From assembly GCA_001179505.1 (NCBI GenBank), contig CDMY01000791.1:62001-126000 (forward strand): 64,000 nt of DNA. Direction: 5' to 3'. The DNA is from Vitrella brassicaformis CCMP3155 (lineage: Eukaryota > Protista > Chromerida). The notes under the pieces are model-generated. The model had not been told where the DNA came from, did no database searches, and was given only the letters and a program-made list of their open reading frames with translations. The stretch's first letter is position 1. Each line of letters begins with the position of its first letter. Positions 31,032-63,509 of the stretch are shown piece after piece. Made by a program: the position numbers and the translations under genes.

Positions 31032-31884
31032 TGACAACTCTCTCCAATGGCTCCTGAAGCAGGCCACACACCAAACACAGGAGCCATCTTTATCGCGCGG
31101 TCGCCACTGCCACTGCTTCAGTGAACCTTACTGAGAGAATCTGCTGGAGCACTGAGAGAAGAGAAGAGAAGAGGGAAGAGGTGAGAGGGAAGAGGGACAA
31201 GGGAATGGGACAGTGCTGCGAGCTTTGAACAATTTCGGGCATGCTGTGAAACGGTGTTGCGAGCTTTGAGGAGGAGGAAAAGGAGGAGGAGAGGCGTGAA
31301 ACGTCAAACTCGAAGGACGCTGACTAGCTTCAGCTGTCTCGACGATACGAACAGGAGGCTCCAGCTGTTTATCCGCTGCGAGCTTGAAGCAACCCGCAGC
31401 GGCAGAGAAGAGTGTGCTGCTTGGCTGCTGCACCACAGAGAAGGTAAATAATCGAAGGACACTGATCTTCCCGCAGCAGCGCGGCGTTTAAGACGGAAAG
31501 ATCTCTCTTTCACCCCGGTAAGGACACGGAGGGAAGACCGTGGTTCTCCGCGTCTGCCACGAGTGGATGCTTGCCTGTGTGATGTCTGCTGCCGCAGGCG
31601 GTCAGCGATGGCGGGCTGAGACGAGCCGAACAACAACCGTGATCCGTGTGCCACAGTGCCAATCATTTATGTGCGGCGCTCGTGCTCTTGGTGACTCTCT
31701 GTGACGTTGGCTGCTCGGCTGTCGACCGCTCAACCATCCCTCGGCCGTTGTCGGGAGTCGTCACTCACTGACTGACTGACTGACTGACTCAGTGACTGCT
31801 TGTAGGAGGACAGACAGCTGTGTGTGAGTCAGTGATTTATCTATCCTTCATCGCAATGCCGCGGGCGGAGTGTGCCGATTTTGC

Positions 31885-32312: not shown

Positions 32313-35300
32313 ATGGAAGAGCCTTTCCCTCGCGCATCTGACGATGTTGCCCACCAGCCTGGTGTCCCCCCTCCCCACGCCCCCTCCCCATCCCCCTCTC
32401 ACCAATTCCCCGCCCCGCCCCCCGCCAGCTTCTTCGCCACCCTGCAGCGATGGGCCTACGAGGTGCCGGACCGCATCGCCTTCCAGTGGCTGGGGCTCGA
32501 CGGCCAAGAGCAGCACCGGCTGACGTATGGAGCGCTGATTGAGCACGTGCGCAAGACGGCATGGTATCTGGAGCACACGTTGGGTCTGGGCAAGGGCGAC
32601 AGGGTGCTGCTGTGCTACCCACCGTCCAACGACTTCACGGTGCCCTTCATGGCCTGCCTGGCCACCGGCATCATCGCCGTGCCCGTCTACCCGGCCGACC
32701 CCAAGAAGCCCAAGGAGGTGCAGCGGCTGCTGCGGGTGGCAGCATCGGCGCGCACCAAGCACGCCCTCACCAACACATCCTACCACCGCATGATCACACT
32801 CGCAGCGGGGCTGGGAGGCCTCGCGGGAGGGCAGGGGGAGGGCCTCCAGCAGCTCAAGTGGACCGTCACCGACACCGTCACACGGACAGTGGGGCGCGAC
32901 GAGTCCGTTGCGTGGCGGCCGGCTGATTTGGAGCCATCCGAGGTGGCCTTCCTGCAATTCACATCGGGGTCCACCAGCGACCCCAAGGGCGTCATGGTGA
33001 CGCACGGCTCCCTCGTCTTCAACGTCCACGTGTGCAGCATGACCTTCGGATTCGCCAACGACGTGGAGCGAAAGGCGCACACAGAGGCCCAGCAGCAGCA
33101 GCAGAGGGACAGAGGTGAGAAGACGGCCACGGCGGCGGCGTCGCCTGTCCCCTTCCTCTACATGGACGGCGATTACCCCCTCGACAAGCTGCAGGCGTAT
33201 TTGCGTGAGCGGCATGCCCTCTCCCAGCAGGTGCTCGGCCACCCGTGTCGGGCATTCAGCTGGCTGCCCATGTACCACGACATGGGGTTAGTGGGGTTCG
33301 TCCTCAGCACCTCGTTCAGCGGCCTCGAGACCTACCTGATGTCACCGCTGGACTTCATCAAGCGCCCTCACGCGTGGCTGCACCTGATGAGCCGCTACCA
33401 GTGCATCGCGTGTGCGGCGCCCAACTTCGCCTTCGACCTGGTGTGCCGCAAGATGCCCGATGAGATCTTCAACTCGCTGGACTTCCGGTGGGTCAGCCAG
33501 GGGGGCTTCCTGTGCGGCGCAGAGCCCATCAGAGACAAAACCGTCAAGAGATTCCTCAAGGTAAACAGAGAGAGAGGAGGGAGGGAGGGAGGGCACACGA
33601 ATGTTCTTTCGCAAACCTCACGTCTCCTCTGTGTGTGTGTCTATGCAGCGTTTTGCGTCCAAGGGAGTGAAGCCATGGAGTTTCCTCCCGGCGTATGGCC
33701 TGGCCGAGAACACCCTGCTCGTGACGGGGAAGCGGGAGTTCCACCAGGGGCCGCTGTTTCTCACTGTCGACAACGAGGAACTGACACACAATGGACGCAT
33801 CGTCGTGGTGAGCAAGCAATGATCAAGGATGCAACCATGGGCAAGAAGACGCTGCTCAACATTTGTGTGTGCCGTCAGGTTCGTGAGGAGAGTTTGAGTG
33901 ACAGCGATGTCAATCTGGCGGACTGGGACGACGTGGCTGAAGAGCCGTCGGCCCGCCTCAAGACACTGGTCGGCTGCGGGCAGCCCGTGCAGGGCACCGA
34001 TGTGCGCATCGTCGACCCAGAGACCCTCAACGAGGTTCATGAGGAGGGCAAACACGGAGAGATATGGGTCATGTCAAGAAGGTGAGTCGAGTGAAGACAC
34101 AACCACAGCAAAAGACACACACCCACATGTGTAATATGGGTACTGCACCTCCTGTCTGCCTCTGTTTGTTTGCATTGATCAGCAATGCGTTGGGCTACTG
34201 GGACCAGCCCCAGCAGACTGAGGAGACGTTTCGTGCCCAGTTCTCACAGTCGACAGGCGAGCTGTCTGCGCGTCGGTTCCTCCGCACTGGCGACTTCGGG
34301 TTTCTGTGGAAGGGCATGCTGTTCGTGACGGGTCGCATGAAGGACATGGTGATAGTCCGCGGCCGCAACTACTACCCACAGGACGTCGAGGAGGCAGTGG
34401 AGGGATGCCACGAGGCCATCAGGCCAGGGTGCTGCGCGGCCTTCTCGACCGACGCCAATGGCACCACCACCACAACAGCAGCGGCAGCGGGCGAGTGTCA
34501 GGGTGAGCTCCTCGTGGTGGTCGCCGAGGTCAGAAACGCCGAGGCGTCGTGGTACAGCCGGCTCTTCCAGCGCGTCAAGAGAGACGAGTACACGGCCATC
34601 TGTGAGGCCATCTGCCGGGCGGTGCAGACGCAGGTGGGCCTGCCGGTCGCCAGGGTGATCCTTCTCGCCCCACGTACCATCCTCAAGACATCAAGCGGCA
34701 AGATCCAGCGGCAGCGCACCAAGGCTGAGCTCACTGACGGCCAACTCAAGGGCATCGTGTTCCAGTACGAGAACGACCACTCTGCGAGCGGATCCATGCA
34801 GCAGCAGCCGCACCCCGCCAGTGGAGGGGATGATGGAGGAGTCTGTGACGCACACGAGGCGTCCTCCCCGTCGGTGCCCACTGACGGAGGTGAGGTGGCC
34901 AGCGGCAACGTCAACCACCCACACGGAGGACCGGGCCACCTCCACACGTCCCTGTCGTCGACCAGACTGGTCGGTGAGTCGGCAGCGACGGATGACGGTG
35001 CGCCGGAAACGCCAGAACCCACTGAAGGAGGCGAGTGCGTCACGGCTCCGCAACAAATCATCCGCGTGTCTCAGCGAGAGATCCAGGAGGTGATAGTGTC
35101 TGCGCTTGGTGAGATCGTCCGTCTGCCCGACCGCCCCGGCCTCGACTGCCCCCTGCACGAGCTGGGCATCGACTCGATAGCCGCGGTCAACTTCTGCAAC
35201 CTGCTGGGCAAGCGGCTGTCGCGAGACTTCCCTGCGACGCTGCTGTTCGACTACCCGACGATCCGCGACCTGACCAACTACATCATGGAGGACGAGGAAT

Positions 35301-38300
35301 GCGGGCGGGCGGGGGGCTGGTCACCCGCTGGTGGCACCAACAGACGCGCATGGATTGCTGCGGACTCGTCTGCCGAGGACAGGGGCATCGCCGTAGTGAG
35401 CACTGCGTGTCGCTTCCCCTGCGGCGTGTCGTCGAGCAAGCAGTTCTGGGAGTTCCTCATGGATGGGTGCGACGGTATCACAGCGGTGCCTCTCAGTCGG
35501 TGGGACATGCACGTCTACTACGACGGGGAGGGGGACAACACGGGCGACCGGTGCTACGTGCAACACGGGGGCTTCATCGAGGACATCGAGTTCTTCGATG
35601 CGGGCGTGTTCGGCATTGCCACAGCAGAGGTGTGGAGCATGGACCCACAGCAACGGTGTGTGCTGGAGGTCGGCTACGAGGCCCTTCACGCAGCAGGATT
35701 CACCAGAGAGAGCCTGCTGGGGGGCGACACGGGCGTCTTCGTCGGCTGCTGCTCGTTCGACTGGAGCAACATGATGCACAAGTGCATCGCTCACGCCAGC
35801 CCCTTCAGCAGCACAGGGAGTGCGGCCAGCATCCTGGCCAACAGGATGTCGTACGTCTTCGGTCTGAAGGGTCCGAGCATGACCATCGACACGGCCTGCT
35901 CGTCCTCGCTCGTCGCCGTCGATATGGCCTCCCGCCACCTGTTGCGAGGCTATGGCAAGGCCGTCATGGCTGGCGGCGTCAACCTGATGCTCGCTCCCCA
36001 CTCATTCATCGCCTTCTGCAAGGCGGGCATGCTGGCGCCCGATGGCAAGTGCAAGACCTTCGACGAGGCAGCCAACGGATACTCGCGTGGTGATGGGTGC
36101 GGCATGGTGGTCATGAAGCGCCAGAGCGATGCCAGAGACAATGAAGATGACATTCTGGCGGTGCTGAGGGGGTCAGGGGTCAACCAGGACGGCAGATCGG
36201 CATCGCTCACCGCACCCAACGGCCCATCACAGCAGCGATGCATCCGGGCGGCCCTCGACGATGCGGGTGTCGGGGCGTCCGAGATCTCTTTTGTCGAGTG
36301 CCATGGCACCGGCACGCCTCTGGGCGACCCCATGGAGGTCCGCTCGCTGCACGCCGTCTTTGCCAAGGCTGCTCGCACCGCGCCGCTGGTGCTGGGTGCC
36401 GTCAAGACCAACGTCGGCCACTCGGAGGGCGCGTCGGGCATCGCCGGCCTCATCAAGACTGTCCTGGTGTTGCAACATGGGCAGGTCCCGCCCAACCTGC
36501 ACTTCAAGCAGCTCAATCACCACATCGCCAGCCTCCTCCAGGGCTTCCCCGTCCACTTCCCGGCCAAGGCCACCCGACTGGCTGCCGTTAAGGGGCAGAG
36601 GCTCAAGGCTGGCGTGCAGTCATTCGGCTTCGGTGGCACGAACGCCCACTGCGTGCTGGAGCAGGGGGACGGAGCATCGAGCACCAAGAAGCGTTCACAG
36701 CTGAGGGGAGATCGTCCTGTTGTCAGCTTCCTGTTCGGCGGAGAGGGCCATGCGCAAGTGGGCATGCTGCAGCAGCTCTACGAGACGGAGGACAGCTTTC
36801 GATCAGCACTCGACCGGTGCGACGGGATCCTGAGAAGCGCTGGTCAAGCGTCTCTTCTCACCACCCTCTACCCCACCCAGCCGCCCCTGCAGTCGTCAGC
36901 TCCCCCCTTGTCGTCGTCGCCAAGCAAGGATCAGTCCCACCCGCTGTCGCTGGACGATCCTCTGGTGGATTTCCCCGCCACCGTGTCCGTGGAGTATGCC
37001 CTGGCGGAGCTGTGGCGGTCGAGAGGTGTGATGCCCGATGTGGTTGTGGGACATGGGGTGGGAGAGCTTGCTGCCGCTGTTGTTGCCAATGTGATGCCAC
37101 TGGATGCGGCACTCACCCTTGCTGTGGAGCAGGCGAAGCTCATCAAAGCGACAGACGTCTTCTTCTCATGCGGATCAGCCAAGGTGGCGGAGAGTGAGGA
37201 GTTCGTGGTCTCGCTGATCATGGATCTCAGCCTGCAGAACAGTGTGGGCGTCGCAGCGACCATTGACGGATGCTCTGTGGTGGTCAACGGCGACATCGAC
37301 GGCCTGAAGACGCTCAAGCAGGCGCTCACTGAGTTGGATCCCCCCGTCCAGTGTGACATCGCTCCCTCCCTCCCATACCATTCTCCCGTCCTCGAGGCCG
37401 CTGCAGAGCAGCTGTCGGATACCATCGATCGGCTTCAAGACCAGCTGTCCGTGCCGTCGTGTTCGCTCGTGTCCACTCTCTCCGGCTTCATGGCCAACTC
37501 GGAGGTGGCCACGGTGGACTACTGGTGTCGGCAGTTCTACCAGACTGTACGATTCCGCGAGGCCATCAAGATGGTGGAAGACCTCAAGTGCAACATCTTC
37601 ATCGAGATTGCTCCCCAAGCCGCTTTGACCGACTTGGCAGCCCAGTCAGTGAGCCGCGACTGCCGTGACGGTTCTATGTGGGTGCCCACGCTCCAGCCTT
37701 CAGTCGAGGGGACCAAAGACAGGAGGCCCTCTGTGAAGTTGCCACGCGCAGAGTCGTTCCAGTCGCTGGCCCGCAGAGTCCAGCAAGCTGTTCGGCGCAC
37801 GTCATCGTCCGTCACATTCAACCGTCAGGCCTTCCCGTGGACCAAAACGGGCCATCCTCTCTTGTCGTCCAGGACTCACGAGCCCGACGGAATGACGGTG
37901 TACACGATGCAGCTGAGTCCCCGTCTCTTCGAGCTCTTCTCGCACCATGAGGTGGCGTCCAAGGCTGTCTTCCCGGCCGCTGGACAACTCGAGATGGTCG
38001 CAGCAGCAGCGCGACTGGATCGCCTGGTGCCAAGTGAGGACGCCGATCGCCCCTCGCTCTTCGACGACTGCCGTCCGGGATCACACCATCTGTGTGTCGA
38101 GCTGCATGACGTGTCCTTTGAGGCGCCCATCGTTATGGACGAGGAGGAAGGCACAATGCAGCCCCTGAGGTGCCAGCTCAAGGACGGCCGCTTTGCTATC
38201 ACGACGATCAAGGTCACCGACGGAAGTGAGTTCATTCATGCGTCGGGATCCGTGGACGTCGCACTCGAGTCCCTTCACGATGACTTTCCCGTGTCCCACC

Positions 38301-41300
38301 ACCAAGTCGACCCGAAGACTCTGCAGCAAGAGACGTGCACTGAGCCAGTCGACATCCCCCACTTGTACGAGGGCCTCCGAACCAACGGCCTCGTGTACGG
38401 CCCCCGCTTCAGGACCCTCAGGCAGGCCTGGGTGGGCACAGGCGACACGCGGGGGCAGGGCCTGGGGCTGGTGCGGCACGGAGGGGCTGGGCTGGAGCTG
38501 TTCGAGCGGCTGTTCGGCTTCCACCCAACCATTCTCGACGGCAGCCTGCATGTGGTGGCTTGCATCCTCGCAGCAGAGATGGCGCCGCCCAATGTGAAGG
38601 AGAGGGAGGATGCCGAGGACGACGACGGTGAGATGAAGCCCGCCACCCTGCACTACGATGGCATCTTCGTGCCCAGCTCCGTCAAGCGAGTGTCCATTGG
38701 GTCAGCCCCCCTCGGCGACAGTGTGTGGTCTCACGTGAGAGTGAGGCCTCAGGCGTCCGGGGACATCATGAGCCTCGACGTCACAACTCTCGTCGCAGAT
38801 GTGACTCTTCTGACCGATAGCGGATCGGTGCTGGGCGAGATCGAGACTTTGACGCTGAGGAAGTTGCACAGCACGAGCAAGATCTCTTACGCCATGCCCA
38901 AGGACGCCCTGTGGACGGTAGCGTGGGTGCCTGTGCCTGACCCGAGTGACGCATCATTGGCACAGCAGCGGCATGGGCCGGATGCCAGCAGTCCCTCCCT
39001 CTCTCCGGCCCCTCCCCGCTATCTGTTGATCGGTCTCGACGACACTCAAGCCGCCCAGATCAAGGAGGACCTGCAGGGTGTGGTCGACATCGTTGCTGTG
39101 CCGGACTGCAAGACTGATGCCGACGTCGGCCGGGTGATGGCGACAGTGCGCGAGGGCAGCTTCAGCAGAATCATCTATGCGGCGGCACTCGTGCTTGGGG
39201 CAAGTGTTGTTGATGTGTTGGATGGAGCGTTGAGACTGGTCAAGGCCCTTGCGAGTGACGAGAGTGGTGACAGCTACGCGAGTGCCACACCCACATTCAG
39301 TCCCAGCACCCTACAAGACAACATCTCCCCTGCTGCGCCGCCAGTCCGCTCTCACACACCTCGTCTGATCCTCTTGAACCAAGAGTCCGATCCCGTGTCC
39401 GTCGGCGCACACATGGCTCCTGCCGGTCTGTGGGGCTTCACTCGGGCGGTCAACGCGGAGCTCGCCGGTGTCCTCGAAGTTGAGTGCCTTGACGTCAGCA
39501 TCATGTCGCGGACGGACCACCACGACACATGGACAGAGGCACATGGCCTGACAGATGTCGCAAAGAGGCTCCGCAAGGGTGTGGAGGCGCTGGAGCACTC
39601 GGGCCAGCAGACCCTGGCGATCCGTCACGACAAGGCATTCGCCCCGCGCCTTGTCCGTCTTCTCGATGACCCCACGGGTGCTGTCGAGTGGTCGATGCAG
39701 CGGAGAGGGGCCCTTACCAATCTCAGAAGGCGGAAGCAACCTGTTGCCTCACGCCCACCTCCACAAGGCAGCCAAGTGGAGTTGCGTGTGTGCGCGGTTG
39801 GTTTGAATTTCCGCGACGTGTTGAATGTGATGGGACTGTATCCGGGCGACCCCGGGCCGCCGGGCAGCGACTGCTCGGGCATCGTCACGCGACTCGGACC
39901 AGACGTCACCGGCGCCACTCAGCACCATCCGCACTTCCGAGTGGGCGACGAAGTGCTGGGCATTGCGGCGGGCTGCCTCAAGACCTACGCCACGACGAGC
40001 TGCCTGCTGCTGACACACAAACCGATCAGTATGACCTTCGAGCAGGCCGCGGCGCAGCCCGTTGTCTTCACGACCGTGCAGCATGCCCTCGGAGACCTGG
40101 CGCAGCTCAAACAAGGCCAGAACGTCCTCATCCACGCGGCCACGGGCGGCGTCGGCCTCACGGCCGTCAACTACGCCAAGCGAGTCGGGGCGACCGTTTT
40201 CGCCACGGCCGGCAGCCAGGAGAAACAAGACTACCTGCGATCTCTCGGCGTCCAGCTCGTCGCCAGCTCCAGAGACCCGAAGGTGAGTCAGTCCATTGCA
40301 TGAGGGTGTGGTATGAGACGGCTGTCATCCTCCTTGTGTGTTGCCTGCTGCTGCTCGTCAGGTGTTCCGCGATGCCCTCGTCTCGTGGACTGGCGAGCAC
40401 GGCTTTGTCAACACGGTCCTCAACTCGCTGTCTGGCGACTTCATCAAGGCCTCCCTCGACGGCCTGCGGCAAGGCAGCGGCGGCACCTTCATCGAGCTCG
40501 GCAAGCGGGGCATCTGGACAGCGGAAGACGTCGCTGCCAAGTACTCACACGTCACCTACCATGTGGTGGCCATCGACGACACCATCGAGCAGCAGCCGGC
40601 GGACTTCCAGACCCTGTTGTCCCGCATCCACAGCCCTCTCGCCGACGGACAGGGCAGGTTGTCCGATCTGCCGCTGACTGAGTTCGATCTGGAGATGGAG
40701 GGAGTCGAGGCCTTCCAGTACATGCAGAGGGCCAAACACATCGGCAAGGTCTGCCTCCGACTACGGAGCTGCTTCGACCCACCGCCCCCATCGCCATCCC
40801 AGGCACTGCTGCAGGGCAAGAAGCTCCACGCGACACTTGAGGATCGTGTGTCGGACGTGTTGGATGGGTGTCAAGACCAAGTGTCAAGCTGGATCCAGGG
40901 CATGAAGGAGCTCGATGACATCTGTGTGAGCCTCGTCAACAATGCCCTGTCGCGGCTGTCCGAGAAGCAGGGCCGTGGGGACCGAGTCGAGGAAGCCACG
41001 CTGCAGCTGCTTCGCGCTCGGCTGTCTGCCATTGATTCCTCGACCGCCTCTGACCTGAGTCGCCCGCAAGGCACCGTCGCTGCTTCCGTGTCGTCTGTCG
41101 AAGATGTTCTGAGGAGGCACAGCGAAGTGGATGCCGAGGCAAAGCTGCTGCAGGCGGTCATGACGCGACTGACCGATGTCATCGACCAAGGCCAATCACC
41201 GTCAGCTGGAGGCCAGAGGGACACTGAGGGCGGTGCAAGTGCTGCCCAGCCTCAAGATGGCAAGGAGGGCCATCTCGTCGACGCGGCCTTGTCTCACGGG

Positions 41301-53300: not shown

Positions 53301-56300
53301 CGGCCGCCAAGTGCGTTCCCACCGCTGAGCAGACACAAAGCCATCCACGGACTGCCGTGGTGGTGTTGCGAGCTGGCGTGTTGAGTGTAGCGGCACGCGC
53401 AGCCCTTCAGACACTGATGGTGGGCAAGTACAAGACACTCGTCAGTGTCGAGGACCGGCAGGATGCGGACGCCCTCACTGCGTGGCCTGACGTGGACATC
53501 TGCGTCGCCAAGACCTCTACCGAAGTGGCTGACGGCGTGAAGAAAGCGTTTGGTACTGCGGCTGAGGTCGACCTGATCGTGGCGCCTGATGGCGAAGAGG
53601 ATGAGGAGGCTCTGACAGAGCTGAGGAGGCTTGTCAAGCCACCTGGCGCCGTCATCAACGGCGTGGACAGTTCCTGGGAGGCGGGACCAGTGTCCTGTGA
53701 GGCTTTGGCGACGGTCGGTGACATGCTGTCGGACTCCTCATGGGAGCAGCATCGTGACAACCTGGATGTGAGGAATGTGAAGGACATGGAGAACCAGGCC
53801 GCGGAGAGTCTGTTCGTTGCCGGCAAGCAGCTCGTAGCGAAGCTCCCCACCGCGTTGGCATCAGACGGGCGTCCGCGAGGCTGTCACGTCATCACGGGAG
53901 GCCTCGGTGAGTTGGGACTGGTCGTGGCTCGGTGGCTGGTCAAGGAGGGAGCGGAGGCCATCGCCCTCCTGTCTCGACGGGGGCGCCTTGCCCCACAGTC
54001 TGGCGAGTCTCTGCGGGAGCACGTGGCGTGGCTTGAGGCGTCGGCTGCACAGGTGGTGCTCAGGCGCTGTGATGTGAGTCGCGAGAGGGACGTCAGGACG
54101 ACAGTTCAGGCGCTGTCAGAGGAGTTCGCAGCTCGGGGCGGCGTTGCAGGCGTCATACACGCGGCAGGCATACTGGCGGATGCGACTTTGCGCAACCAAA
54201 CAAGGGAGTTGATCGACACCGTGTTCAGACCCAAGGTGAGCCTTCACCTCAGTCAGATACACACGAGGTGGTGAAGGCAATCCTTCATCTATCTCATCTG
54301 TCGTTCGTGTTGGTGTACTGTCAGGTTCATGGCGGGTGGAACATGCACAGATCGACCATCGATCTGGGCGTCGACCTCAAGTACCTCGTGTGTTTCTCGT
54401 CGGTCACGGCCCTGCTCGGCAACCTGGGCCAGACCAACTACTCGGCGGCCAACGCCTGTCTGGACGCCTTGATGGCCTACCGCCGCCACCTCGGCCTGAG
54501 CGGACTGAGCATACAATGGGGCGCGTAAGTGATGCAGACAGAAAGACATACATACATGAGCTTTGCCGAAAGTGTTGGTTGGGACGTCATGGTTCGTGCT
54601 GCGTGTTGCTGCGTGATTCAGGTGGACAGAGCAGGGTATGGCCTCACGGGCGAGCAACCTGGCCATACTGCAGGCAGTCGGCATCGCCCCGCTCGACAAC
54701 GACCTCGCACTCCGCAGCCTAGCCAGTCTCCTGCCGTCGACCACTCACCCAGTGGTGGCTGTCCAAGAGATTGACTGGAGGCGCTTCGCACTCAACCTTG
54801 ACGCAGCCACAGGGCTGTTCAGTCGGGTGTGCCCTCCACAGGCGAAGCGTCAGGCAGGGCGGTCTCGAACCGGCCAACGCCAACATGCCCAGAGAGAGGC
54901 CATGGGCGCCGCGCAGGATCAAGAGGCACTGGACGCTTCACTCCAAGATCTGGGCATCGGCGGCGGTAGGAACCGCACATACGCACTGTGAAGCGGCACA
55001 CTCAATTATCACCTGGTATATTCGTTGCTGCTATTTCGTTCGTTCAGGCGACTCGTCCGGGAAGCCCCAGATGCGGAGTGCTGAGTTGGACCGCATCCGG
55101 GCGCTGCCTGCTGCGGAGCGGCGGCGTGTGGTCGAGTCAGTCGTGCTGTCGATTGCCGAGGAGGTCCTGGCGGTCTCAGAGATGCCCCCCATGGACATGC
55201 CGCTCCAGGAGCTGGGCATCGACTCGATGGCTGCTGTCGAGCTCAGGAACGCCCTGTCCAGACGGCTGGGGGTCAAGCTGCCTCCAAATGTCCTCTTCGA
55301 CTTCCCGACCATCGAGGACATCATCACATTCGTCTTGGGGGACCTGCTGGCAGACGATGGAGATCAAGACGGCAATGGCGCGGCCGCCTTCCAGGCACAC
55401 GCTTCTGCGGCTGTCAGGCGGCAACGGGCTGAGCTGGAGAGCGACATCGGCCTTCCCGGCACCATCAGCCTGGACGGCCGTCGCATCATATCTCCGCAGG
55501 GCCCAGACGGCACCTTCAGGAGCGTTTTCCTGACAGGGGCCACTGGCTTCATGGGCACCTGTCTTCTGGACTCACTCTTGAGGCGCAACCCGTCCGTGAC
55601 TGTCTGGTGCCTCATCCGGTGCAAGGACGAAGCACACGGATGGGACAAGCTGGCCAAGCAGCTCGCCGCCTATCGGCTGCCCACCGACGGGTCTCTTGAG
55701 GACGTCAAGCAAAGAGTAGTGGTGGTCAAGGGGGACTTCACCGAGGACAATCTTGGCATGACGGACGAGAGGTGGCAGGAGGTCGTCGAGAGCGTCGAGG
55801 CCATCTTCCACTGCGGCGCCATGGTCAACTTCTCGGCCACCTACTCGATGCTCCGGAAAGCCAACGTCCTGTGCGTCAAAGACGTTCTCAGGCTGGCGAC
55901 GTCCCTGCCGACCCACGTCATTCCAGTCCACCACGTGTCGACGCTCGGCGTGTTCCACGACAACCTCCACGATATCCCCACCGCCCCTCTGCGGAACGGT
56001 CAGCCAGACACCACTCGCAACTGGTGCCTTGACAACGGTCGCCGCGTCTTCTTCGAGGACGACCCGGTGCTCGAGGACGATCTCTCGAGCCAGCACCACA
56101 TCAAGCTTGCCCTCGGCTACTCCCAGTCCAAGTGGACGGCCGAGCGAGTGCTGCGTATCGGCCAGGAGAGGCGCCTGCCGATCAGCATGTATCGACCAGG
56201 CCGCATCGGTGGCCACTCGAGGACGGGCGCGGTGAACCCGACGGACTTCCCGAATGCGTTCGTCAAGGGCTGCATCCAGATGGGGACCATTCCTGACATC

Positions 56301-58081
56301 GACGTGCCGGTCCACCTGGTGCCCGTCGACTTCTGCGCAGATGCTGTGGTGCACATAGCCATGAAGGCCGAAGGAGCGGGGTACCAGGGGGGCCCTTACA
56401 ACCTCGACAACCCCCACGTCACCACCATGCACGACATAGCAGAGGCTGTGGGCAGCCTGGGGTATTCGTTGTCCTTGGTGCCATACACTGAGTGGCGCAA
56501 GGAGCTCGGCAAGGAGATCAGTGACAATGCGGCGCACCCCCTGGCGCCGCTCGAGCACATGCTCGTCGACGAGCCTCCCAACGTGTGTGACGTGCCCTTC
56601 TTCGACATGACCAACACTTGGTGAGCAAACCACACATGTCAACACAAGAAACACACACGAGTGGGCAGCGCCGGATTTCCTCTTTCCGTCGTACGCACAG
56701 GTCCGCCGTATCTGACGACGAGAGCATCGTGTGTGTGCCTTCGTCAGTGGAGTATCTGGAGGTCAACCTCCGATATCTCCGCGACGTGGACTGGCGCACA
56801 TCGATGCCATCGGTCGGACTGGGCGGCTCCCTGGAGCTGGAGGCATTTGTCAAGGACCTTGGCAGCGGAGAGGCAGTGGCGGCCGACAAGGAGCTCTACC
56901 TGATCGCTGGACCGGCCGTACTCGAGCAGTACTTCACCGGTACGATTCGTGCGATACATACAGGGACAAACAACCAACCAGTACTCCATTAGATGCACCC
57001 ACTTGCCTCCGTATTCAATGTCTGCCTGTCCGTCTGTCTGTCTGTTGAGTGCAGATCTGAGCTACACGCTCTCCCTGAGGGGCTACAAGCTGCTCCTGCT
57101 CCAGCTGCCCGCCGAGGCCACTTCGCCGGACGCCCCATCTGACGGGGCCTCCCTGACGTCTTCGCTCCCCTTCCTGAGCAGCGTCACCAATCTCGCCGGT
57201 GTCCTGGTCGCTGCCTTGAGGCGGAGGAGGAAGGACGGACCCTTCAACATCATCGGCTGGTCTTTTGGAGGTAAATAGGAGGGGGAGGCCCAATCATGGC
57301 CTGGCCGAAGCCATGCACCGACCAATGTGGTTGTCTGTTGCCTGTTTGTCTGTGTTTCGTGCAGCTCTGGTGGCCATTGAGGTGGCGAAAATCCTCAACC
57401 GCCGCACCGACGACAACTCGTGTGTCCCCGTGCTGTCGCTCATCGACCCCCTGGTGCCCATCTCGCTGTCCGCCTCGGCGGCCACCCAGGCGCCCTATTC
57501 CTTTGCTCTGTCGGTCATTCTGTCGACGGTGGTGGGCATGTTCAAGGATGTCCTCCCTGAGGACTTCGATCAGCTCCCTGTGGACCAGCAGCAGCACATG
57601 CTCATGGAGCTCGTCGCTGAGGCCACCGGGGCCAACATCGCAACAGCCACAACAGACGTGGCAGAACAGCAGGAGGGAGCGACTACCAGTGCCGGTGCTG
57701 AGAATGACTTCCTGCGACAGCAGGCCGACTTGGTGTCGGCTGTCCTGGGGGCTGGCGCGCAGCACGCGGCTAAGGGGCCGCATTACGACGGCAAGACACA
57801 CATCATCGACACACCGGTACGCATGCCAAACTGCGAGTCGATATCGAACACATTGTACCGAGCCGACACAAAATATCGTGCTTTCCTTTCTGCAGTGCCC
57901 GAGTCCATTTCCTCCGTCGAGTGGGATGGCCGTCGTGGCGGCCCCCTCTGTGGTGGCTCTGGGCAGCATGAGCATGACACACACTCTGCTGCCCGGCGGG
58001 GGTCACTTCAACTGTCTGCGTGACCCGCATGTCGACCCCCTGGTGGATGCGCTGCTGGAGAAGCTCACTGCTGTCGAGTGA
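32313..58081 (+). CDS. Giant multimodular type I polyketide/fatty acid synthase (~8,182 aa, 15 exons): FAAL-ACP-KS-AT0-DH-ER-pseudoMT-KR-ACP-KS-DH-ER0-KR-ACP-KS-AT-DH-ER0-KR-ACP-R-TE
   Basis: Exons read as 32313-33560, 33649-33807, 33879-34081, 34183-40282, 40362-42581, 42665-49204, 49273-49612, 49707-54235, 54325-54524, 54622-54965, 55048-56620, 56701-56939, 57055-57270, 57365-57816, 57896-58081. All introns are GT-AG and in phase; total 24,549 nt. Three KS with DTACSS/HGTGT/H, four ACP with G(I/L)DS, three KR with TGGxGxLG and YxAAN. Confidence 0.95.
32400..35290 (+). other. PKS loading unit: fatty acyl-AMP ligase (FAAL) + ACP1
   Basis: LQFTSGSTSDPKGVMVTH, FSWLPMYHDMGLVG, APNFAFDL, CGAEPI, PAYGLAENTL, LRTGDFGF..VTGRMKDMVIVRGRNYYPQDVE, KTSSGKIQR; ACP LHELGIDSIAAV. 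Boundaries approximate. Confidence 0.9.
35380..43140 (+). other. PKS module 1: KS, inactive AT (GHGVG), DH, intact ER, pseudo-MT, KR, ACP2
   Basis: KS DTACSSSL/ECHGTGT/NVGHSEG; AT VVGHGVGE (Ser->Gly); DH HEVASKAVFP + HPTILDG; ER GLNFRDVL + LIHAATGGVG; MT-like TVTDRD/LLDVSEDP/FEAVITVNAI/LLTDNGALILTE; KR ITGGFGCLG, LAD, NYAAAN. Confidence 0.85.
43230..48520 (+). other. PKS module 2: KS, no AT, DH, degenerate ER, KR, ACP3
   Basis: KS ends SSFGFGGTNAHVII and reaches the DH start (PWTDVWHPFL) within about 30 aa; DH HVILSRIIWP + HPALLDG; ER lacks GLNFRD and has LITEAATDVG; KR ITGGVGGLG, LAD, NYAAAN; ACP LGELGLDSLSAV. Confidence 0.85.
48610..55350 (+). other. PKS module 3: KS, active malonyl-type AT, DH (Asp->Glu), vestigial ER, KR, ACP4
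   Basis: KS DTACSSAL/EAHGTGT/NINHLEG; AT FLFTGQGS, VIGHSLGE, RAFHS; DH HLTQNERIYP + HPAFLES; ER remnant without a GGVG loop; KR ITGGLGELG, LAD, NYSAAN; ACP LQELGIDSMAAV. Confidence 0.85.
55520..58081 (+). other. PKS release region: thioester reductase (R/SDR) followed by an alpha/beta-hydrolase thioesterase
   Basis: R: VFLTGATGFMG, IFHCGAMVNF, GYSQSKWTAE, RPGRIGG. TE: GPFNIIGWSFGALVAIEVA (GxSxG), VLSLIDP, LPGGGHFNCL. Confidence 0.85.
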
Positions 58082-59747
58082 GACAGAGATGTCTTTCGTC
58101 TGACTGCTGAGTTCATGGGTGTGATGTGTGTATGGCGAAGGCTCGACACTGGTTTCTTGTCTATTTGGGTGTGTGTTGGTTCGTGCGCTATGGCAGTAAG
58201 TAAGACGTCCGTCGTAGGCGATGATGTGGGGTGGGGTGGGGTGGGAGGGTAAGTCTTTCTGTTCGGTGTGTGGATTCAGTCCGCTAAGGATGATATGATG
58301 TCTCTCTCTCTCTCTCTCTCTCTTAAGGAGGTTCATTTGTGCTTGTGCGGCATAAGGTATATGAAGGTGAGTATCAAGACTGTAGGTCTGTCTCTGTGTG
58401 GCGCTAAGTCAGTCCAAAGCGTGCTTTCGACGTGTGCATGGCTGAATGGCTGAACGGCGTGGGTGGGTGCAGGTGCGGGTGTGGGTGATTGTCTTGTCAC
58501 ATATATACTATGTGTAGCTATACGTGTGTGTAGACACGCATTCATTCGTACGTAAGTACGCACATCGATCTGTATTTATGTATTTGTCAGTACGTCTTGG
58601 CATCTGTTCACACAAGTGCGTCCTTCCTAGGCACACTTTTTTCGTCTGGCTCTCTCTCTCTCCGTCTCTCTCTCTCTTTCTCTCTCTCTGTGTCGCCTCT
58701 GCAGCTGTGTACGTCACGAAGGTGTCTTCTTCCGATGCAATCGGAGGCCGGGGCCAGTCTGTCTATCTGTCTGTCTGTCTGTCTTTTGATGTGATGAGGA
58801 AGAAGCTATCGGTGAATGTGGAATGTGGAAGAAGGTCTAGCCATACAGCTGGCCTACGGCGAATGTGGAATTCCACACAAGAAGCGTATGCAGCAAGGCA
58901 AGGCGCGGCGCCTCAAGTAGGTAGCGTTCCTTCTGAATGTTGTCCTGTCTGTAGTCATTCACTAGCTCTCTGTATTGTCTGCCTGTCTATAATACCGGCC
59001 TGTTTATAATCCGTCTGTACGGTGGATTGATTGGGGCAGTTTTGGCTGTTGTGGTGGGGGGATTCTGCTCGACAGTTTGCGTCTGGTTGTCTACCAGTCT
59101 GTCTACCTGTGTGCGACCGACTATTTGGCAATGTATGTATGATGCGGGATGCGACAAAGGGATGTAATGATGCGATAAATGTGGACATGAACATATGAAT
59201 GCCCGTCAGGGCGCGTTACGTCACATTCGTCGTGTCACACACATCAAATGCCTGCCTGCTGTGTCCCCACCCCACGGCTCCCACAGCACACGGCACGGCA
59301 GCCGTTGCAGTTTCCCAGACACTAGGTAGGTGAATTGTGGTTGGTGCACCTGCAGACGCAGTCCGTCCGTCATATGCGCAGACAGAGAAAGAAGCGAACC
59401 AGGCTAAGCTAATCAAGCATGGCAGCGAGAGAGCAGTACATACAATGATGTGTATACATACGTACGATGGACGAAGGGATGATGTGTATAGGGCCCGAGA
59501 CATATCGATGTGTATATACACACACACATGCATATGGATGGATGGATGGACGGCCCAATATATACCAGACCACAGATGCATCATCCATGTGGATGGCCCA
59601 CAGTCTTAATGAATGAATGCCCACGCCACAAGGGAAAAAGTCCTCAACGGCCCATCATCGCTCACACACACACACACACACATACCCATATATGGCACAA
59701 CACACACAGCGCCCTCCACACAGCGCCCCACCCCCCCTTCCCCCTCG

Positions 59748-61408
59748 TCATGGGCAGCCACAGGCCATCTTGAGGGCTTGGAACTCCTCCATGATGCAGT
59801 CGAGGAGCATGTCGGGCGACTTGACCGTCCTGAGGTCGCTGCCAGCCGCCACCCACAGGCCGTTGCTGTAGGAGAAGGCCGTCACTCCCACACCCACGTT
59901 GCCCATGATGGGCGGAGCGAAGAAGCAGTGCCGCAGCGCGATGCCTTTCACAGGACTCAGACGCTGGGGACCTGCAAGCAAGACACACGACACACTGTAT
60001 GTGTGGTTATCCCCCCCTGTCTGTGTCAGTTGTGCCTGCCTACCAGGGACATTGCTGACAAACATGCTGATCTTGCTCCGAATGGGCTTGAGTATCGCCT
60101 CGGCGAGGCACGATGGGCACTGGTAGAGCCACTGCATGAACAGCGCCCCGCCTAGCAGCACACACCCTTGTCTCGATCCCTCCTCAGCTGCCGCACCACA
60201 CACCCCAGCCTCTCGAGCGGGCTGGACGCGTCGGCGACTAGGGGCAGCACGGCGAATGCGTTGAAGAAGCTGTTGGACAGCGTCTTCAGCTCGCCCGTCC
60301 TCAGATTGACCGGCCAAACGAACATGGCATCTCGCCAGGTGCTCAGCGGCGATGGCAGCTCACCCTCTGCTGCATTCCTATCACCACCGTGGGTCTTGTT
60401 GATGTATCGGACGATCGCGCCCACCACCAGCGACACAAACACCTCATTGATGGACACTTTGCTTGCACCCGCCGCCATGAGCACTTGATCAGACATCCTC
60501 ACGGACCTCAGCTCGTCCATCGAGATGCACCTGGGCAGTGAGACCTGTCGCAGGCCGCCGGGCGAGGGACGGTGGGGGGCCGAGCGGGATGACGGTGGTG
60601 GGTCCCATGACGGAATAGACGGCAGCAGCGGCAGCGCGAGGATCGGCAGGGGCGCGTAGAAGAGCATCGAGGCGTACATGGCCAGCCGGTCCCACATGCT
60701 GAGTGACGGCAGGTGAGAGAACGACTTGCTGATGCTGGCAGTCTCATCTCGGTCGAAAAGCTCTTTGGTGATCATGCGCACGAGAGCCGCACCATCGCCG
60801 AGCAGGTGGTGGATGCGCCACACGAAGATCGTGCTGGGCGCGCCGTCCAGCCCTTCGCACTGTGGAATCACCTTGATCTGCCACGCCGGGCGGCTCATAG
60901 GCAGGTCCCCGTTGATGCAGATGTCCAAATACTCGCGCAGATCTCGCAAGGGCAGCAAGAGAGGCGCCCCAAGTGACGGCATCTTGCCGCTCCGCCGGAT
61001 CTCCTCTCTCACACAGTCGTGCGGCACCTGGAGGACGTGATTGCGGACATCAAACCTCCCGTCCCCCTTGTCATAGGAGAGGCACCAGCGCCACAGGACT
61101 CGCTTGAGAGTGCACTTGAGCCGCTCGTGCTTGTCCACCCACCGCTCCTTCACGGCCTCCAGCATATGAGCCAGCGACAGCCCATCATCCGCAAAGAAGA
61201 CGATGCTGATGATAGCGGGTGACTCGACGGTCTCGGCTTGAAGCATCATCACCTCGGTGCGGTTGAGGGGCTGCAGGCGGCCATGATGGGACGATAGTAG
61301 CGCCACACAGCCGCACACGGTGCGCAGGCACCATGCTGCGAGGGAGACCGCCATCAGCAGAGGGTGGAGGATGAGAGAGATGACGAACGCGGCCGTCTGG
61401 AGGAACAT
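59748..61408 (-). CDS. WSD: Wax ester synthase/diacylglycerol acyltransferase (WS/DGAT) family protein; apparent -1 frameshift near 60175
   Basis: N-terminal hydrophobic segment, FDVRNHV, LPMSRPAWQI, catalytic WRIHHLLGDGAAL (HHxxxDG), SINEVFVSLVVGAIVRY, WPVNLR, LSNSF, PLERL. The C-terminal part (MFVSNVPG|P..GVTAFSYSNGL) is in a different frame. In-frame 72-nt intron at 59972..60043. Confidence 0.9.
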
Positions 61409-61488
61409 TTCGTGTCAGCATTTCAGCTCATTTCGCCGGCCGTTCAGCAGCAGCGGTTTCACGTCTGCGGGCTTGGGGTTTTGGATCG

Positions 61489-61504
61489 CTAAACCCTAAA
61501 CCCT
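61489..61504. promoter_or_regulatory. Telomere-like repeat CTAAACCCTAAACCCT (telo-box-like) in the WS/DGAT-START divergent promoter
   Basis: About two TTTAGGG-type units seen directly. The telo-box (AAACCCTA) is an established plant promoter element. Its role here is inference. Confidence 0.4.
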
Positions 61505-61618
61505 CCGTGTAACCGACCGACCGACCGTGTCTATTCCGCTACCCTCCTTCCTTTTGATCCCTTTCCGTTCCTTCGACACGCTCAGCATCCCTTTCCGTCC
61601 TGATCGTGGTTTTGTTGT

Positions 61619-63509
61619 ATGCCGCGCACCACCGACGGAATCCCGTCCCTGCCCTCCTCCGACTCCATTCCCAGCCCCCCCAGCAGCCCTGACACCCTCG
61701 CCTCCCGCCCACCCCTCTCCCCTCTCGCCCTCTTCCCCGTCAAGGATGGCTCCCCACTCTGCTTCATGTCCATCTCCGGCCACAGCCCTGTGAGCGACGA
61801 CGGCGACGAAGCGTACGGCAGCGGCATCCCTGGGTCCACCATGAGCAACACTTACTACTCGGCTGCCGAGTGGGAGCAAGATCCTCGCGAAAAGGAGGCT
61901 CCCGAAGGCCACCACCCGGCCCCGCGTGCGCGTGGTTGTTTCCCGCGTTTCAGGCGGTGGAGTGTCGGCCACGCGCACCAGACCAGGACGCCCCGAGAGG
62001 ACGAGTCAACCTGCCGCAGCTCGGTGCCAGTCGACCTGGCGACACTCGTGTTCGCCCGAGCTCAGTACGATGACCCTCTCGAGGTATGCTGTGCTATGCA
62101 CGGCAGTCGAAGCCACAGCGAAACAGTCCGCTCACCCGACACGACCCGGTTGTTTTGTCCTTCCTCTGTGTGTGTCGCGTAGATTCACCCCGGTGACCAG
62201 TCCCTGACGCCACCGCCGGCGAGCCCTCAGTCTGTGCGCGAGTATGTGGCCCAGGCGTCTGACACCCCTCCCTCCAGCAAACACAACGCCCTCTCGCGTG
62301 TGGCGGACTGCCTGCGTGGCGCCAGGAAGCGGACCATCTCTCGGGTCAAGTCCTGGATCCACCACCAGGAGGGTTCGGTTTTTCCGAGGAAGTCGAGTGC
62401 GAATTTCGAGGACCATGAGGACCCTGCGGTGTGGCGGAATCTTGACCCCAACTTGCAGTACCGCCTCAGGGGCTTCCCATCGCCCTTCGAGCCCGAGGAG
62501 GACCGCAGACTCAGGGACCTCTACGTCCAACAGGTGGGGGAGGGAGCGAGGCAAGCAGAGAAGCATGGATCGATGTCTGCTCTCTTCTGTGTGTGTCGGC
62601 TGGTTGGTGTGGTGCAGGGCAAGAAGGCGATCCAGGAGCATTTGGCCCTCAAGGCGGACACTCGTGGCTGGAAGCACGCCGGAACCAAGGGCGGTGTCAA
62701 GGTACGTATGGCTGCTGTAGGAAGCACTCCCGCATGGATTGTATGTGTATGTGTGTGTGTGTGCTATCTTTCAGTGTTACCGGAAGGAAGTGACTGACCA
62801 TTCGCTGCCTGTGTTGGTCAAGGGTGAGGTGAACTTCGGCAAGGGGCCCGGCGTCACCCCAGAGGATGTCATCGACTTCTTCACCATGATCGACCCCCAG
62901 CTCTACAACAGCGAGCTCGACATATGTAAGATCTTACCACAGACAGACAGACAACACAATCCTTTATCTTGTGCGCGTGCGTGTGTGTCCGTGTGTGTGC
63001 AGCGATCCATCTGCGCAACTGGCGTGTGACGTCGTGGCCCGGCGTGTACGTCTTCTACCAGAGCTACAAGGGCATGATGGGCGTCCCCGGCCGCGACTTC
63101 ACCATCTTCCTCTACCGCGAGAAGATCGCCGATGACTACTACGCCTTCGCCAGCCAGTCCATCGACTGGCCGAGGACCGAAGACATGCTTCACGGCCGAG
63201 TGACGGCACACCTCCTCGTAAGCAACACACACCTCATAATAAGCTTCAACGCATGCGCCGCGCATTTTCACGTTGGTCTGTCTGTTTGTCGCGTGTTTGG
63301 CTCTGTCTGTCGGTCAGTTGGGTGCGATGGATGCCCGGTATGACGAGGAGGGCAACGTGATCCTGACGGCCATGTATCAGGCTGACCTGAGGGGGTCCCT
63401 GCCTGAGTGGATCAAGCGAATGGTGGCCATCAACTCGATCTCGTGGCTGGGCCAGGCCAAGACGCTCTACGACAAGACCTGGGGCAAGGGCAAGTGGGCG
63501 AAGGCGTGA
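61619..63509 (+). CDS. START/SRPBCC lipid-transfer domain protein with low-complexity N-terminus
   Basis: C-terminal exons give GWKHAGTKGGVKCYRKEV..LVKGEV, YVFYQSYKGMMGVPGRDF, FASQSIDWP, RVTAH and TAMYQADLRGSLPEWIKRM, the START motif pattern. The start codon is uncertain (61619, 61766 or ~61840). Confidence 0.85.

What the first reader, a model, noticed from the sequence alone, without database searches (positions are those of the whole stretch)
32313..63509. Candidate eukaryotic lipid gene cluster: FAAL-primed megasynthase + wax ester synthase + START lipid carrier
Seen: three consecutive genes encode a FAAL-loaded, three-module PKS/FAS ending in a thioester reductase, a WS/DGAT with an intact HHxxxDG motif, and a START protein. 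Established: FAAL-ACP units load preformed fatty acids, R domains release aldehydes or alcohols, WS/DGATs esterify fatty alcohols with acyl-CoA, and START domains shuttle lipids. Apicomplexan FAS1/PKS enzymes have been linked to very-long-chain and cyst/oocyst wall lipids. Inference: the three genes form one pathway making and delivering a very-long-chain, probably unsaturated wax ester, for example for a cyst or sporangium wall. I am not aware of a described physical cluster of this type in alveolates, but I could not search.
Basis: partly seen in the sequence, partly recalled or inferred. Interest (0 to 1): 0.9.

Follow-up and report, generated by a model that had tools for sequence, protein, structure and literature searches.

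The report
Giant lipid synthase beside WS/DGAT–START pair
A roughly 8,000-residue fatty-acid-primed polyketide/fatty-acid synthase lies next to a wax-ester-synthase-like gene and a START lipid-carrier gene. The last two form a head-to-head pair that is also found in the alga Vitrella, but the wax-ester-synthase copy here is frame-broken, so the proposed three-gene wax pathway is unproven.

Summary

**1. Megasynthase (32313-58081, + strand, spliced).** AT1 has Gly at the active-site Ser, module 2 has no AT, and ER2 and ER3 are degenerate.

**2. WS/DGAT-like gene (61408-59748, minus strand, convergent with the PKS).**
- HHLLGDG and NVPGP are intact.
- The reading frame breaks at about 60152-60166.
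- The break is present in two DNA runs and in a spliced mRNA contig.
- RNA depth is low in one run and zero in the other, so this is probably a transcribed pseudogene.

**3. START gene (CDS 61619-63509, six exons, + strand).** It is well expressed and runs divergently from the WS/DGAT gene, with 210 bp between the two ATGs.

**New result.** In Vitrella brassicaformis, a WS/DGAT of the same apicomplexan/chromerid clade also sits head-to-head with a homologous START gene, 188 bp apart. The WS/DGAT-START pair is therefore conserved.

**Limits.** No relative that I could inspect has a PKS next to its WS/DGAT, so the PKS link rests on adjacency and biochemical logic alone.

The scan's other notes on this window (single intact AT; tandem R+TE) agree with what I found. 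The scan has no note of this finding on other DNA.

The parts
32313..58081 (+). Spliced megasynthase gene, about 8,100-8,300 aa. Order: FAAL-ACP0 | KS1-AT1(dead)-DH1-ER1-pseudoMT-KR1-ACP1 | KS2-DH2-ER2(degenerate)-KR2-ACP2 | KS3-AT3-DH3-ER-like remnant-KR3-ACP3 | R-TE.
   Evidence: Pfam on the ORF pieces. Motif scan. An open frame can be kept from R through TE with GT-AG introns. The length is my estimate from the ORF pieces.
32442..34700 (+). Fatty acyl-AMP ligase-type loading domain, split by introns.
   Evidence: PF00501 E 6e-50. Best PDB hits are FAALs: 7r7g, 3kxw, FadD23/28/32, 3pbk. The best single-domain NCBIfam hits (ranks 2-5) are FAAL subfamilies, E 7e-47 to 3e-37; the overall top hit is the multidomain NRPS/PKS model NF004282, E 1.5e-53.
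36728..37711 (+). AT1, with active-site Ser replaced by Gly (VVGHGVGE).
   Evidence: PF00698 E 1.8e-33; sequence.
50114..51049 (+). AT3, the only acyltransferase with an intact GHSLG.
   Evidence: PF00698 E 1.3e-51.
46364..47305 (+). ER2 with a degenerate NADPH loop (LITEAATDVG, against LIHAATGGVG in ER1).
52193..53881 (+). 563-aa region between DH and KR in module 3. It has no Pfam ER, only faint similarity to the module 1 DH-KR interdomain stretch just upstream of the part that aligns with ER2, and no GGVG loop.
   Evidence: no family at E<=1; E 2e-4 over 83 aa.
55524..56620 (+). Thioester reductase (R) domain with GATGFMG and YSQSK.
   Evidence: PF07993 E 1e-65; TIGR01746 273 bits against cutoff 213.
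57051..58078 (+). C-terminal thioesterase domain (GWSFG nucleophile, GGHF histidine). The intron at 57817-57895 is confirmed by RNA.
   Evidence: PF00975 30.4 bits against cutoff 26.4; RNA joint.
58332..59554 (.). Transcribed, unspliced, repeat-rich stretch between the two convergent genes. Probably the PKS 3' UTR.
   Evidence: RNA contigs X1#2, X2#8 and X2#9. It is present in X2, where the WS/DGAT is silent.
59748..61408 (-). WS/DGAT-family gene with an N-terminal hydrophobic anchor, HHLLGDG and NVPGP. The 72-nt intron is at 59972-60043. The frame is broken.
60791..60811 (-). HHLLGDG catalytic motif (residues 200-206).
60152..60166 (-). Frame break. The N-part frame stops at TAG 60154-60152 and the C part continues in another frame. 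A 14-nt GT..AG stretch would restore the frame, but the mRNA contig retains it. Relatives have about 5 more residues here.
61409..61618 (.). 210-bp divergent promoter region between the WS/DGAT ATG and the START ATG. The START mRNA contigs begin at 61531 and 61539.
61619..63509 (+). START-domain gene, 485 aa. Exons: 61619-62083, 62183-62533, 62618-62701, 62775-62925, 63003-63217, 63318-63509. The START domain covers roughly residues 270-480, after a Ser/Pro-rich N-terminal region.
   Evidence: RNA joints; exon solving; PF01852 on two exons; ESM-Atlas START clusters; homology to the Vitrella START neighbour.

Best explanation
The locus joins two things.

**(A) A CpFAS1-type megasynthase.**
- The FAAL domain adenylates a preformed long-chain fatty acid and loads it on ACP0.
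- Three KS modules each add a C2 unit.
- AT3, the only intact AT, must supply malonyl to all three module ACPs.
- Module 1 reduces fully. Modules 2 and 3 probably stop at the enoyl stage, giving a very-long-chain 2,4-dienoyl thioester.
- The product leaves by the R domain as aldehyde or alcohol, or by the TE as acid.

**(B) A conserved bidirectional gene pair.** It consists of a membrane-anchored WS/DGAT of an apicomplexan/chromerid clade and a cytosolic START lipid-transfer protein. The two share a promoter region of about 200 bp. I infer that they work together: the acyltransferase makes a neutral ester and START moves a substrate or the product.

**State in this genome.** The WS/DGAT member of the pair is frame-broken and barely transcribed, so it is most likely a pseudogene. 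START stays highly expressed.

**Shown.** The domain content, the active-site states, the frame break in DNA and mRNA, the exon structure, and the pair's conservation in Vitrella.

**Inferred.** The chemistry of the product, the functional coupling of the pair, and any hand-over from PKS to WS/DGAT. I treat the PKS adjacency as unproven and more likely unrelated to present-day function.
For: **Megasynthase.**

**WS/DGAT.**
- The frame break is required by homology to seven relatives.
- It is retained in a spliced mRNA contig and in both DNA runs.
- RNA depth is 3-7 in X1 and 0 in X2, against 40-86 for START.
- No product of this gene is in the 5.8-billion-protein collection.

**The pair.**
- In Vitrella locus L012, START (-, 3989-5528) and WS/DGAT CEM31540 (+, 5716-7884) sit head-to-head.
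- The window START aligns to it at E 4e-8 (9e-6 against all loci then held), with a second collinear exon.
- The window WS/DGAT sits in a clade of 8 rows (SH-aLRT 98) with both Vitrella paralog groups, Cryptosporidium and Rhytidocystis.

**PKS adjacency.** No PKS lies next to any relative's WS/DGAT.
Against: - By my rough estimate, an R-terminated FAAL-PKS as immediate neighbour of a WS/DGAT-START pair is unlikely by chance. With about 25 KS genes among about 26,000 genes it comes to roughly 0.2-0.6%, judged post hoc. It also fits a textbook alcohol-then-ester logic.
- The C-terminal WS/DGAT part still scores well and keeps NVPGP, so any decay is recent, or a minor isoform could restore the frame.
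- Only two RNA runs, kept as assembled contigs, were available. Their depths are poor measures of expression.
- The Vitrella START-adjacent paralog is in the sister subclade, not the nearest one (quick tree, long branches).
- The Vitrella contig with the pair ends 4 kb beyond START, and its far 9 kb was not read.
Confidence: 0.55

Rival explanations
1. Relic three-gene pathway. PKS, WS/DGAT and START once formed one pathway: the R domain released an alcohol, WS/DGAT esterified it, and START delivered it. The WS/DGAT step was then lost recently in this lineage, perhaps replaced by a paralog or by the PKS's own TE.
For: - The three genes are immediately adjacent.
- The WS/DGAT C part is still well conserved.
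- The WS/DGAT-START pair is conserved.
- The same WS/DGAT clade occurs in Cryptosporidium. Its FAAL-3-module-R FAS1 is thought to release very-long-chain alcohols (PMC2995488).
Against: No inspected relative has a PKS beside its WS/DGAT. In C. muris and C. felis the WS/DGAT is not near FAS1, PKS1 or a START gene.
Confidence: 0.22
2. All three genes are functional, and the frame break is bypassed by removal of a 14- or 32-nt micro-intron, by frameshifting, or by a stage-specific isoform.
For: GT..AG stretches of 14 nt (60165-60152) and 32 nt (60163-60132) would each restore the frame (my arithmetic). HHLLGDG and NVPGP are intact.
Against: - The only mRNA contig across the site is spliced at the real 72-nt intron but keeps the 14 nt.
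- All five introns confirmed here are 72-100 nt long.
- Expression is very low or absent.
- Relatives have about 5 more residues at the site.
Confidence: 0.1
3. Pure chance. None of the adjacencies, including WS/DGAT-START, has functional meaning.
For: The nearest Vitrella paralog (CEL92754) and the Cryptosporidium genes have no START neighbour.
Against: The same head-to-head geometry, with 188 bp against 210 bp between ATGs and homologous START genes, recurs in two genomes whose WS/DGATs share under 30% identity. By my estimate, START genes are about 1 in 1,000 genes.
Confidence: 0.05

Closest known systems
Cryptosporidium parvum CpFAS1 (cgd3_2180), a type I FAS with acyl ligase-ACP loader, three modules and a C-terminal reductase (PMC2995488; PMC3760245)
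   Same: FAAL-type loader plus ACP, three KS modules, and a terminal ACP-R. CpFAS1 is thought to elongate a preformed long-chain acid to a very-long-chain product that is released reductively.
   Different: Here AT1 is dead, AT2 is absent, ER2 and ER3 are degenerate, and a pseudo-methyltransferase sits in module 1. A TE follows R, and the gene has about a dozen introns. CpFAS1 modules are complete, and its gene is intronless.
Bacterial and plant WS/DGAT (Acinetobacter AtfA, Arabidopsis WSD1, mycobacterial Tgs); TIGR02946, PF03007 + PF06974
   Same: Two-domain architecture, HHxxxDG and NxPGP motifs.
   Different: Very divergent: PF03007 scores 19.7 bits, below its cutoff of 23.6, and the nearest relative is 27-31% identical. 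It belongs to an apicomplexan/chromerid clade with an N-terminal membrane anchor. The frame is broken here. No activity has been tested.
Mycobacterial PDIM-type loci: FadD26 (FAAL), PpsA-E/Mas (PKS), PapA5 (HHxxxDG acyltransferase), MmpL7/LppX (lipid export and carrier). From my own knowledge.
   Different: That system is bacterial and operon-based, with a different carrier family. Here the link between the PKS and the other two genes is untested.
START-domain lipid transfer proteins (PF01852; the PCTP/STARD family)
   Same: The START signature is recognisable in the C-terminal roughly 210 residues.
   Different: Only weak profile matches on single exons. It has a 270-aa Ser/Pro-rich N-terminal extension. 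The ligand is unknown.
Olefin synthase / CurM-type termini (FAAL-ACP-KS-AT-KR-ACP-ST-TE). From my own knowledge.
   Same: A FAAL-primed PKS ending in a tandem of a modifying domain plus a TE.
   Different: The penultimate domain here is a thioester reductase, not a sulfotransferase.

Membership tests
CpFAS1-type FAAL-primed modular type I FAS/PKS | N-terminal fatty acyl-AMP ligase-type adenylation domain followed by an ACP | tested here: met
   PF00501 E 6e-50. The best PDB matches are FAALs, and FAAL subfamilies are the best single-domain NCBIfam matches (the overall top hit is the multidomain NRPS/PKS model NF004282). ACP0 has GIDS. Independence from CoA cannot be tested in silico.
CpFAS1-type FAAL-primed modular type I FAS/PKS | Three KS domains with the Cys-His-His triad, each module with its own ACP | tested here: met
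   DTACSS and HGTGT are present in all three KS domains. The second His reads NVGH, NIGH and NINH. There are four ACPs with a DS(L/I/M) motif.
CpFAS1-type FAAL-primed modular type I FAS/PKS | Each module carries a complete, active AT-DH-ER-KR set (the FAS-like, fully saturating feature) | tested here: not met
   AT1 reads GHGVG, there is no AT2, and ER2 and ER3 are degenerate. It is therefore a PKS-like variant, not a strict FAS1 equivalent.
CpFAS1-type FAAL-primed modular type I FAS/PKS | C-terminal thioester reductase as the release domain | tested here: met
   TIGR01746 scores 273 bits, above its cutoff, and GATGFMG and YSQSK are present. An extra TE follows.
WS/DGAT (TIGR02946; PF03007 + PF06974) | HHxxxDG catalytic motif in the N-terminal domain | tested here: met
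   HHLLGDG at residues 200-206.
WS/DGAT (TIGR02946; PF03007 + PF06974) | Profile match above the curated cutoff | tested here: not met
   PF03007 scores 19.7 against 23.6. TIGR02946 scores 48 and 38 bits against 310. Only PF06974 passes, at 48.3 against 20.7. All of its best library relatives that I scanned are WS/DGATs.
WS/DGAT (TIGR02946; PF03007 + PF06974) | One continuous reading frame through both domains | tested here: not met
   Frame break at 60152-60166, present in DNA and mRNA.
WS/DGAT (TIGR02946; PF03007 + PF06974) | Wax ester synthase or DGAT activity | not testable with these tools
   Needs an enzyme assay.
START lipid-transfer domain (PF01852) | Profile match over the roughly 200-residue helix-grip domain | tested here: inconclusive
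   The exons could only be scanned singly. They gave E 0.005 (profile positions 91-151) and 0.085 (158-186), collinear but below the cutoff. ESM-Atlas puts both exons among START clusters, with scores 0.96 and 0.92. The homologous Vitrella gene carries a precomputed weak START hit.
Eukaryotic biosynthetic gene cluster (co-functional neighbours) | Linkage conserved in relatives | tested here: inconclusive
   Met for WS/DGAT-START in Vitrella L012. Not met for the PKS at any of seven loci. The PKS-side orthologs could not be fetched.
Eukaryotic biosynthetic gene cluster (co-functional neighbours) | Co-expression | tested here: inconclusive
   Two RNA runs, kept only as contigs, show depths that do not co-vary.

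The most novel reading that the evidence does not exclude
Myzozoans (chromerids plus apicomplexans) share an undescribed lipid-ester module. In it, alcohols released by R-terminated FAAL-PKS/FAS1 enzymes are esterified by a lineage-specific, membrane-anchored WS/DGAT clade. That clade includes the uncharacterised Cryptosporidium 'WSD1 C-terminal domain' proteins. A dedicated START protein then handles the esters.

On this reading, the chromerid locus preserves the ancestral physical linkage of all three steps. It would also name the missing enzyme downstream of CpFAS1 and a route to the waxy lipids of the oocyst or cyst wall.
Probability: 0.15. Interest if true: 0.75.

Novelty: new variant of a known kind. 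Interest (0 to 1): 0.45.

Why it matters
- **An open question downstream of CpFAS1.** Apicomplexan FAS1/PKS enzymes end in reductases, and their products and downstream enzymes are unknown (PMC2995488). Oocyst walls contain waxy acid-fast lipids of unproven origin (PMC3760245).
- **Candidate partners.** A WS/DGAT clade shared by chromerids and Cryptosporidium, genetically paired with a START protein in two free-living and culturable relatives, gives concrete candidates to test.
- **An unusual megasynthase.** It has one working AT for three modules, two degenerate ERs and a tandem R-TE terminus.
- **A limit on the claim.** The wax-ester step at this locus looks dead. The locus should not be cited as a working eukaryotic gene cluster without expression and lipid data.

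Tried and rejected
- **Word-indexed protein search with the 418-aa WS/DGAT ORF.** It found nothing, not even the gene's own product. The exhaustive search then gave only 46 weak hits.
- **PDB sequence search with single START exons.** Only noise came back.
- **Vitrella neighbours of CEL92754.** The divergent 294-aa neighbour and the others show no similarity to the window's START or PKS.
- **START-WS/DGAT fusion proteins ('Rosetta stone').** None was found among ten long relatives.
- **A third instance of the pair.** A search with Vitrella CEM31540 returned four proteins and nothing usable.
- **L011, the 90%-identical Vitrella duplicate.** The duplication covers only the WS/DGAT gene body, so it says nothing about START.
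- **Upstream 32 kb of the window.** It holds a PPR gene, a PI4-kinase and a Ctr copper transporter, with no further biosynthetic genes.
- **Vitrella megasynthase orthologs (7,400-9,000 aa).** They lie outside the length range reachable with the longest stop-free ORF, so synteny from the PKS side was not tested.
- **Organism.** Chromera velia is inferred only. The support is Vitrella as the nearest relative at about 30% identity and public runs from 2013-2015. It was not verified.


Full report
**What is there**

The + strand between 32154 and 58081 carries a chain of long ORF pieces separated by short frame changes. Pfam reads them in this order:
- AMP-binding, PP-binding
- KS, AT, DH, ER, a methyltransferase-like remnant, KR, PP-binding
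- KS, DH, ER, KR, PP-binding
- KS, AT, DH, KR, PP-binding
- NAD_binding_4

The loader's best solved relatives are fatty acyl-AMP ligases: 7r7g, 3kxw, FadD23/28/32 and 3pbk. After one multidomain NRPS/PKS model, its best NCBIfam models are FAAL subfamilies. The terminal domain passes the thioester-reductase model TIGR01746 at 273 bits, against a cutoff of 213.

**Corrections to the megasynthase**

- **Release domains.** R is not the last domain. An exon with GWSFG matches the Thioesterase family above its cutoff (30.4 bits against 26.4). The last exon carries GGHF and ends at the stop 58079-58081.
- **R-TE continuity.** An open frame can be kept from R through this TE using GT-AG introns of 80-115 nt plus the RNA-confirmed intron 57817-57895. 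A 1,302-nt RNA contig extends 732 nt upstream of 57550, and by my arithmetic it should reach the R exon. That last step is inference.
- **Acyltransferases.** AT1 has Gly in place of the active-site Ser (GHGVG). Module 2 has no AT. Only AT3 has GHSLG.
- **Enoyl reductases.** ER1 keeps HAATGGVG and ER2 reads TEAATDVG. The 563-aa DH-KR spacer of module 3 has no Pfam ER and only a faint resemblance to the module 1 DH-KR interdomain region.
- **Intact sites.** All three KS domains keep Cys-His-His. All three DH domains keep the His and Pro of HxxxGxxxxP, with Ser or Asn at the Gly position. All three KR domains keep their Ser/Tyr/Asn residues.

These points agree with two other first-stage notes on this window, s1-248730 and s1-248731.

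**The WS/DGAT gene**

It lies on the minus strand, convergent with the PKS.
- **N part.** The 418-aa ORF 61408-60152 has HHLLGDG and matches TIGR02946 at E 7e-13.
- **C part.** This part, 60151-59748, matches PF06974 at E 1.5e-12. After removal of a 72-nt intron it reads NVPGP.
- **Divergence.** The word-indexed search found nothing. The exhaustive search gave 46 hits, the best at E 2.6e-11. All ten that I scanned are WS/DGATs.
- **Two frames.** Seven relatives aligned by tblastn; six align in frame -1 down to about 60182-60395 and then in frame -3 from about 60116. The N frame ends at a TAG at 60154-60152.
- **The break is real.** RNA run X1 holds a contig that is spliced at the 72-nt intron yet runs without gap or mismatch across 60042-60229. 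Two DNA runs match the window with no indels. The break is therefore in the genome and in the processed mRNA.
- **What is missing.** Relatives have about five more residues at that point.
- **Expression.** Contig depth over the gene is 3-7 in X1 and 0 in X2. START reads 40 and 86, and the PKS 3' end reads 11-19 and 7-12.

I conclude that this copy is most likely a recently inactivated, weakly transcribed pseudogene. A truncated product would lack the last ~110 residues of the C domain, including NVPGP.

**The START gene**

- **Exon chain.** RNA contigs start at 61531 and 61539 and give introns at 62084-62182, 62534-62617 and 63218-63317. The 453 nt of mRNA between the second and third of these fix two further introns, 62702-62774 and 62926-63002. 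Both have GTACG or GTAAG donors.
- **Product.** The model is 485 aa.
- **START identity.** Two collinear exons hit PF01852 weakly. Both sit among START clusters in the ESM Atlas.
- **Spacing.** Its ATG at 61619 is 210 bp from the WS/DGAT ATG at 61408. The two genes are divergent.

**Conserved linkage**

I looked up genomic context for the WS/DGAT's relatives.

| Relative | Locus | Neighbours within the flanks read |
|---|---|---|
| Vitrella CEL92754 (nearest) | L002 | no PKS, no START |
| Three metagenomic contigs | L005, L008, L009 | no PKS, no START |
| Cryptosporidium muris | L013 | no PKS, no START |
| Cryptosporidium felis | L014 | no PKS, no START |
| Vitrella CEM32787 (gene-only duplicate of CEM31540) | L011 | no PKS, no START |
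| Vitrella CEM31540 | L012 | head-to-head START, 188 bp between starts |

At L012 the WS/DGAT is at 5716-7884 (+), and the 341-aa gene at 3989-5528 (-) carries a START hit.
- Residues 272-335 of the window's START model align to an exon of that gene at 37.5% identity. The E-value is 4e-8 against the gene region and 9e-6 against all loci then held.
- Residues 367-395 align collinearly to the next exon.

A quick maximum-likelihood tree puts the window's WS/DGAT in a supported clade of eight rows (SH-aLRT 98). The clade also holds both Vitrella groups, two Rhytidocystis sequences and the Cryptosporidium proteins annotated 'WSD1 C-terminal domain-containing'. Branches are long, so the order inside the clade is unsure.

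The WS/DGAT-START divergent pair is thus conserved between two chromerids. The PKS adjacency is not seen anywhere else. The Vitrella pair is followed by a DUF676 esterase-like gene and a GMC oxidoreductase, not by a PKS.

**Surroundings**

Upstream of the PKS lie a PPR gene, a PI4-kinase and a Ctr copper transporter. None of them suggests a larger biosynthetic cluster.

**How it most likely works**

- **Megasynthase (inferred from domain states and from CpFAS1 biochemistry; PMC2995488).**
  - The FAAL loads a long-chain acid.
  - Three C2 extensions follow, with malonyl supplied by AT3 alone.
  - Reduction is full in module 1 and stops at the enoyl stage in modules 2 and 3.
  - R or TE releases the product.
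- **The pair (inferred from conservation).** A membrane-anchored acyltransferase and a START carrier act on the same neutral lipid.
- **The hand-over.** Whether PKS alcohol is passed to the WS/DGAT is not shown. In this genome the acyltransferase looks inactive.

My odds:
- Conserved pair beside an independently acting PKS: about 0.55.
- Relic of a real three-step pathway: about 0.22.
- A three-gene pathway that is functional today: about 0.10.
- Pure chance throughout: about 0.05.

**Literature**

- Giant FAS-I/PKS-like enzymes of chromerids are known, and are thought to elongate fatty acids or make polyketides (PMC7464705).
- FAAL-primed three- and four-module synthases of Cryptosporidium and coccidia have been linked to acid-fast oocyst-wall lipids (PMC3760245).
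- A WS/DGAT-like gene is up-regulated in immature Eimeria oocysts (PMC10818985).
- I found no paper describing wax esters in Chromera, or a WS/DGAT-START pair or a PKS-WS/DGAT-START cluster in alveolates, although the WS/DGAT + START term search itself failed on syntax and was not rerun.

**Verdict**

The megasynthase is a new variant of the CpFAS1 kind. The conserved WS/DGAT-START pair is the most useful new result. The three-gene wax-ester cluster remains a hypothesis, weakened by the broken WS/DGAT and by the lack of conserved PKS linkage.

Noticed in passing
window 58332-59554: An unspliced, repeat-rich transcribed stretch lies between the convergent PKS and WS/DGAT genes. Its RNA contig depth (24-65) is higher than that of the PKS 3' exons (11-19). 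It could be a long PKS 3' UTR, a separate non-coding RNA, or depth inflated by repeats.
   Followed up: partly
window 59534-59555 and 62936-62958: Short dispersed repeats (ACAGACAG-type). Many DNA and RNA contigs from elsewhere in the genome end or branch at them. They produce false 3-kb 'joints' in the DNA runs.
   Followed up: no
window 41421-41732: A methyltransferase-like remnant sits between ER1 and KR1. Its SAM motif is degenerate (LIVGHSVGH). It resembles the structural pseudo-MT of animal FAS.
   Followed up: partly
window 11174-19230 (+): Exons of a PI4-kinase (PI4K_N and PI3_PI4_kinase hits). A PPR-repeat gene lies at 5-1282 (-) and a Ctr copper transporter at 30096-31127 (-).
   Followed up: partly
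L012 9294-17529 (Vitrella CDMY01000724.1): Downstream of the Vitrella START-WS/DGAT pair lie a DUF676 (putative serine esterase) gene, convergent with the WS/DGAT, and a GMC oxidoreductase. Together they may form a small lipid-metabolism neighbourhood.
   Followed up: no
L011 6021-8809 against L012 5913-8543: Vitrella has a recent duplicate of the START-adjacent WS/DGAT, with 85% DNA identity over the gene body only. The duplicate sits next to a His_Phos_1 gene instead of a START gene.
   Followed up: yes
P0056 residue 269: The START-adjacent Vitrella WS/DGAT has QHCMSDG instead of HHxxxDG. The first His is replaced and the second is kept.
   Followed up: no
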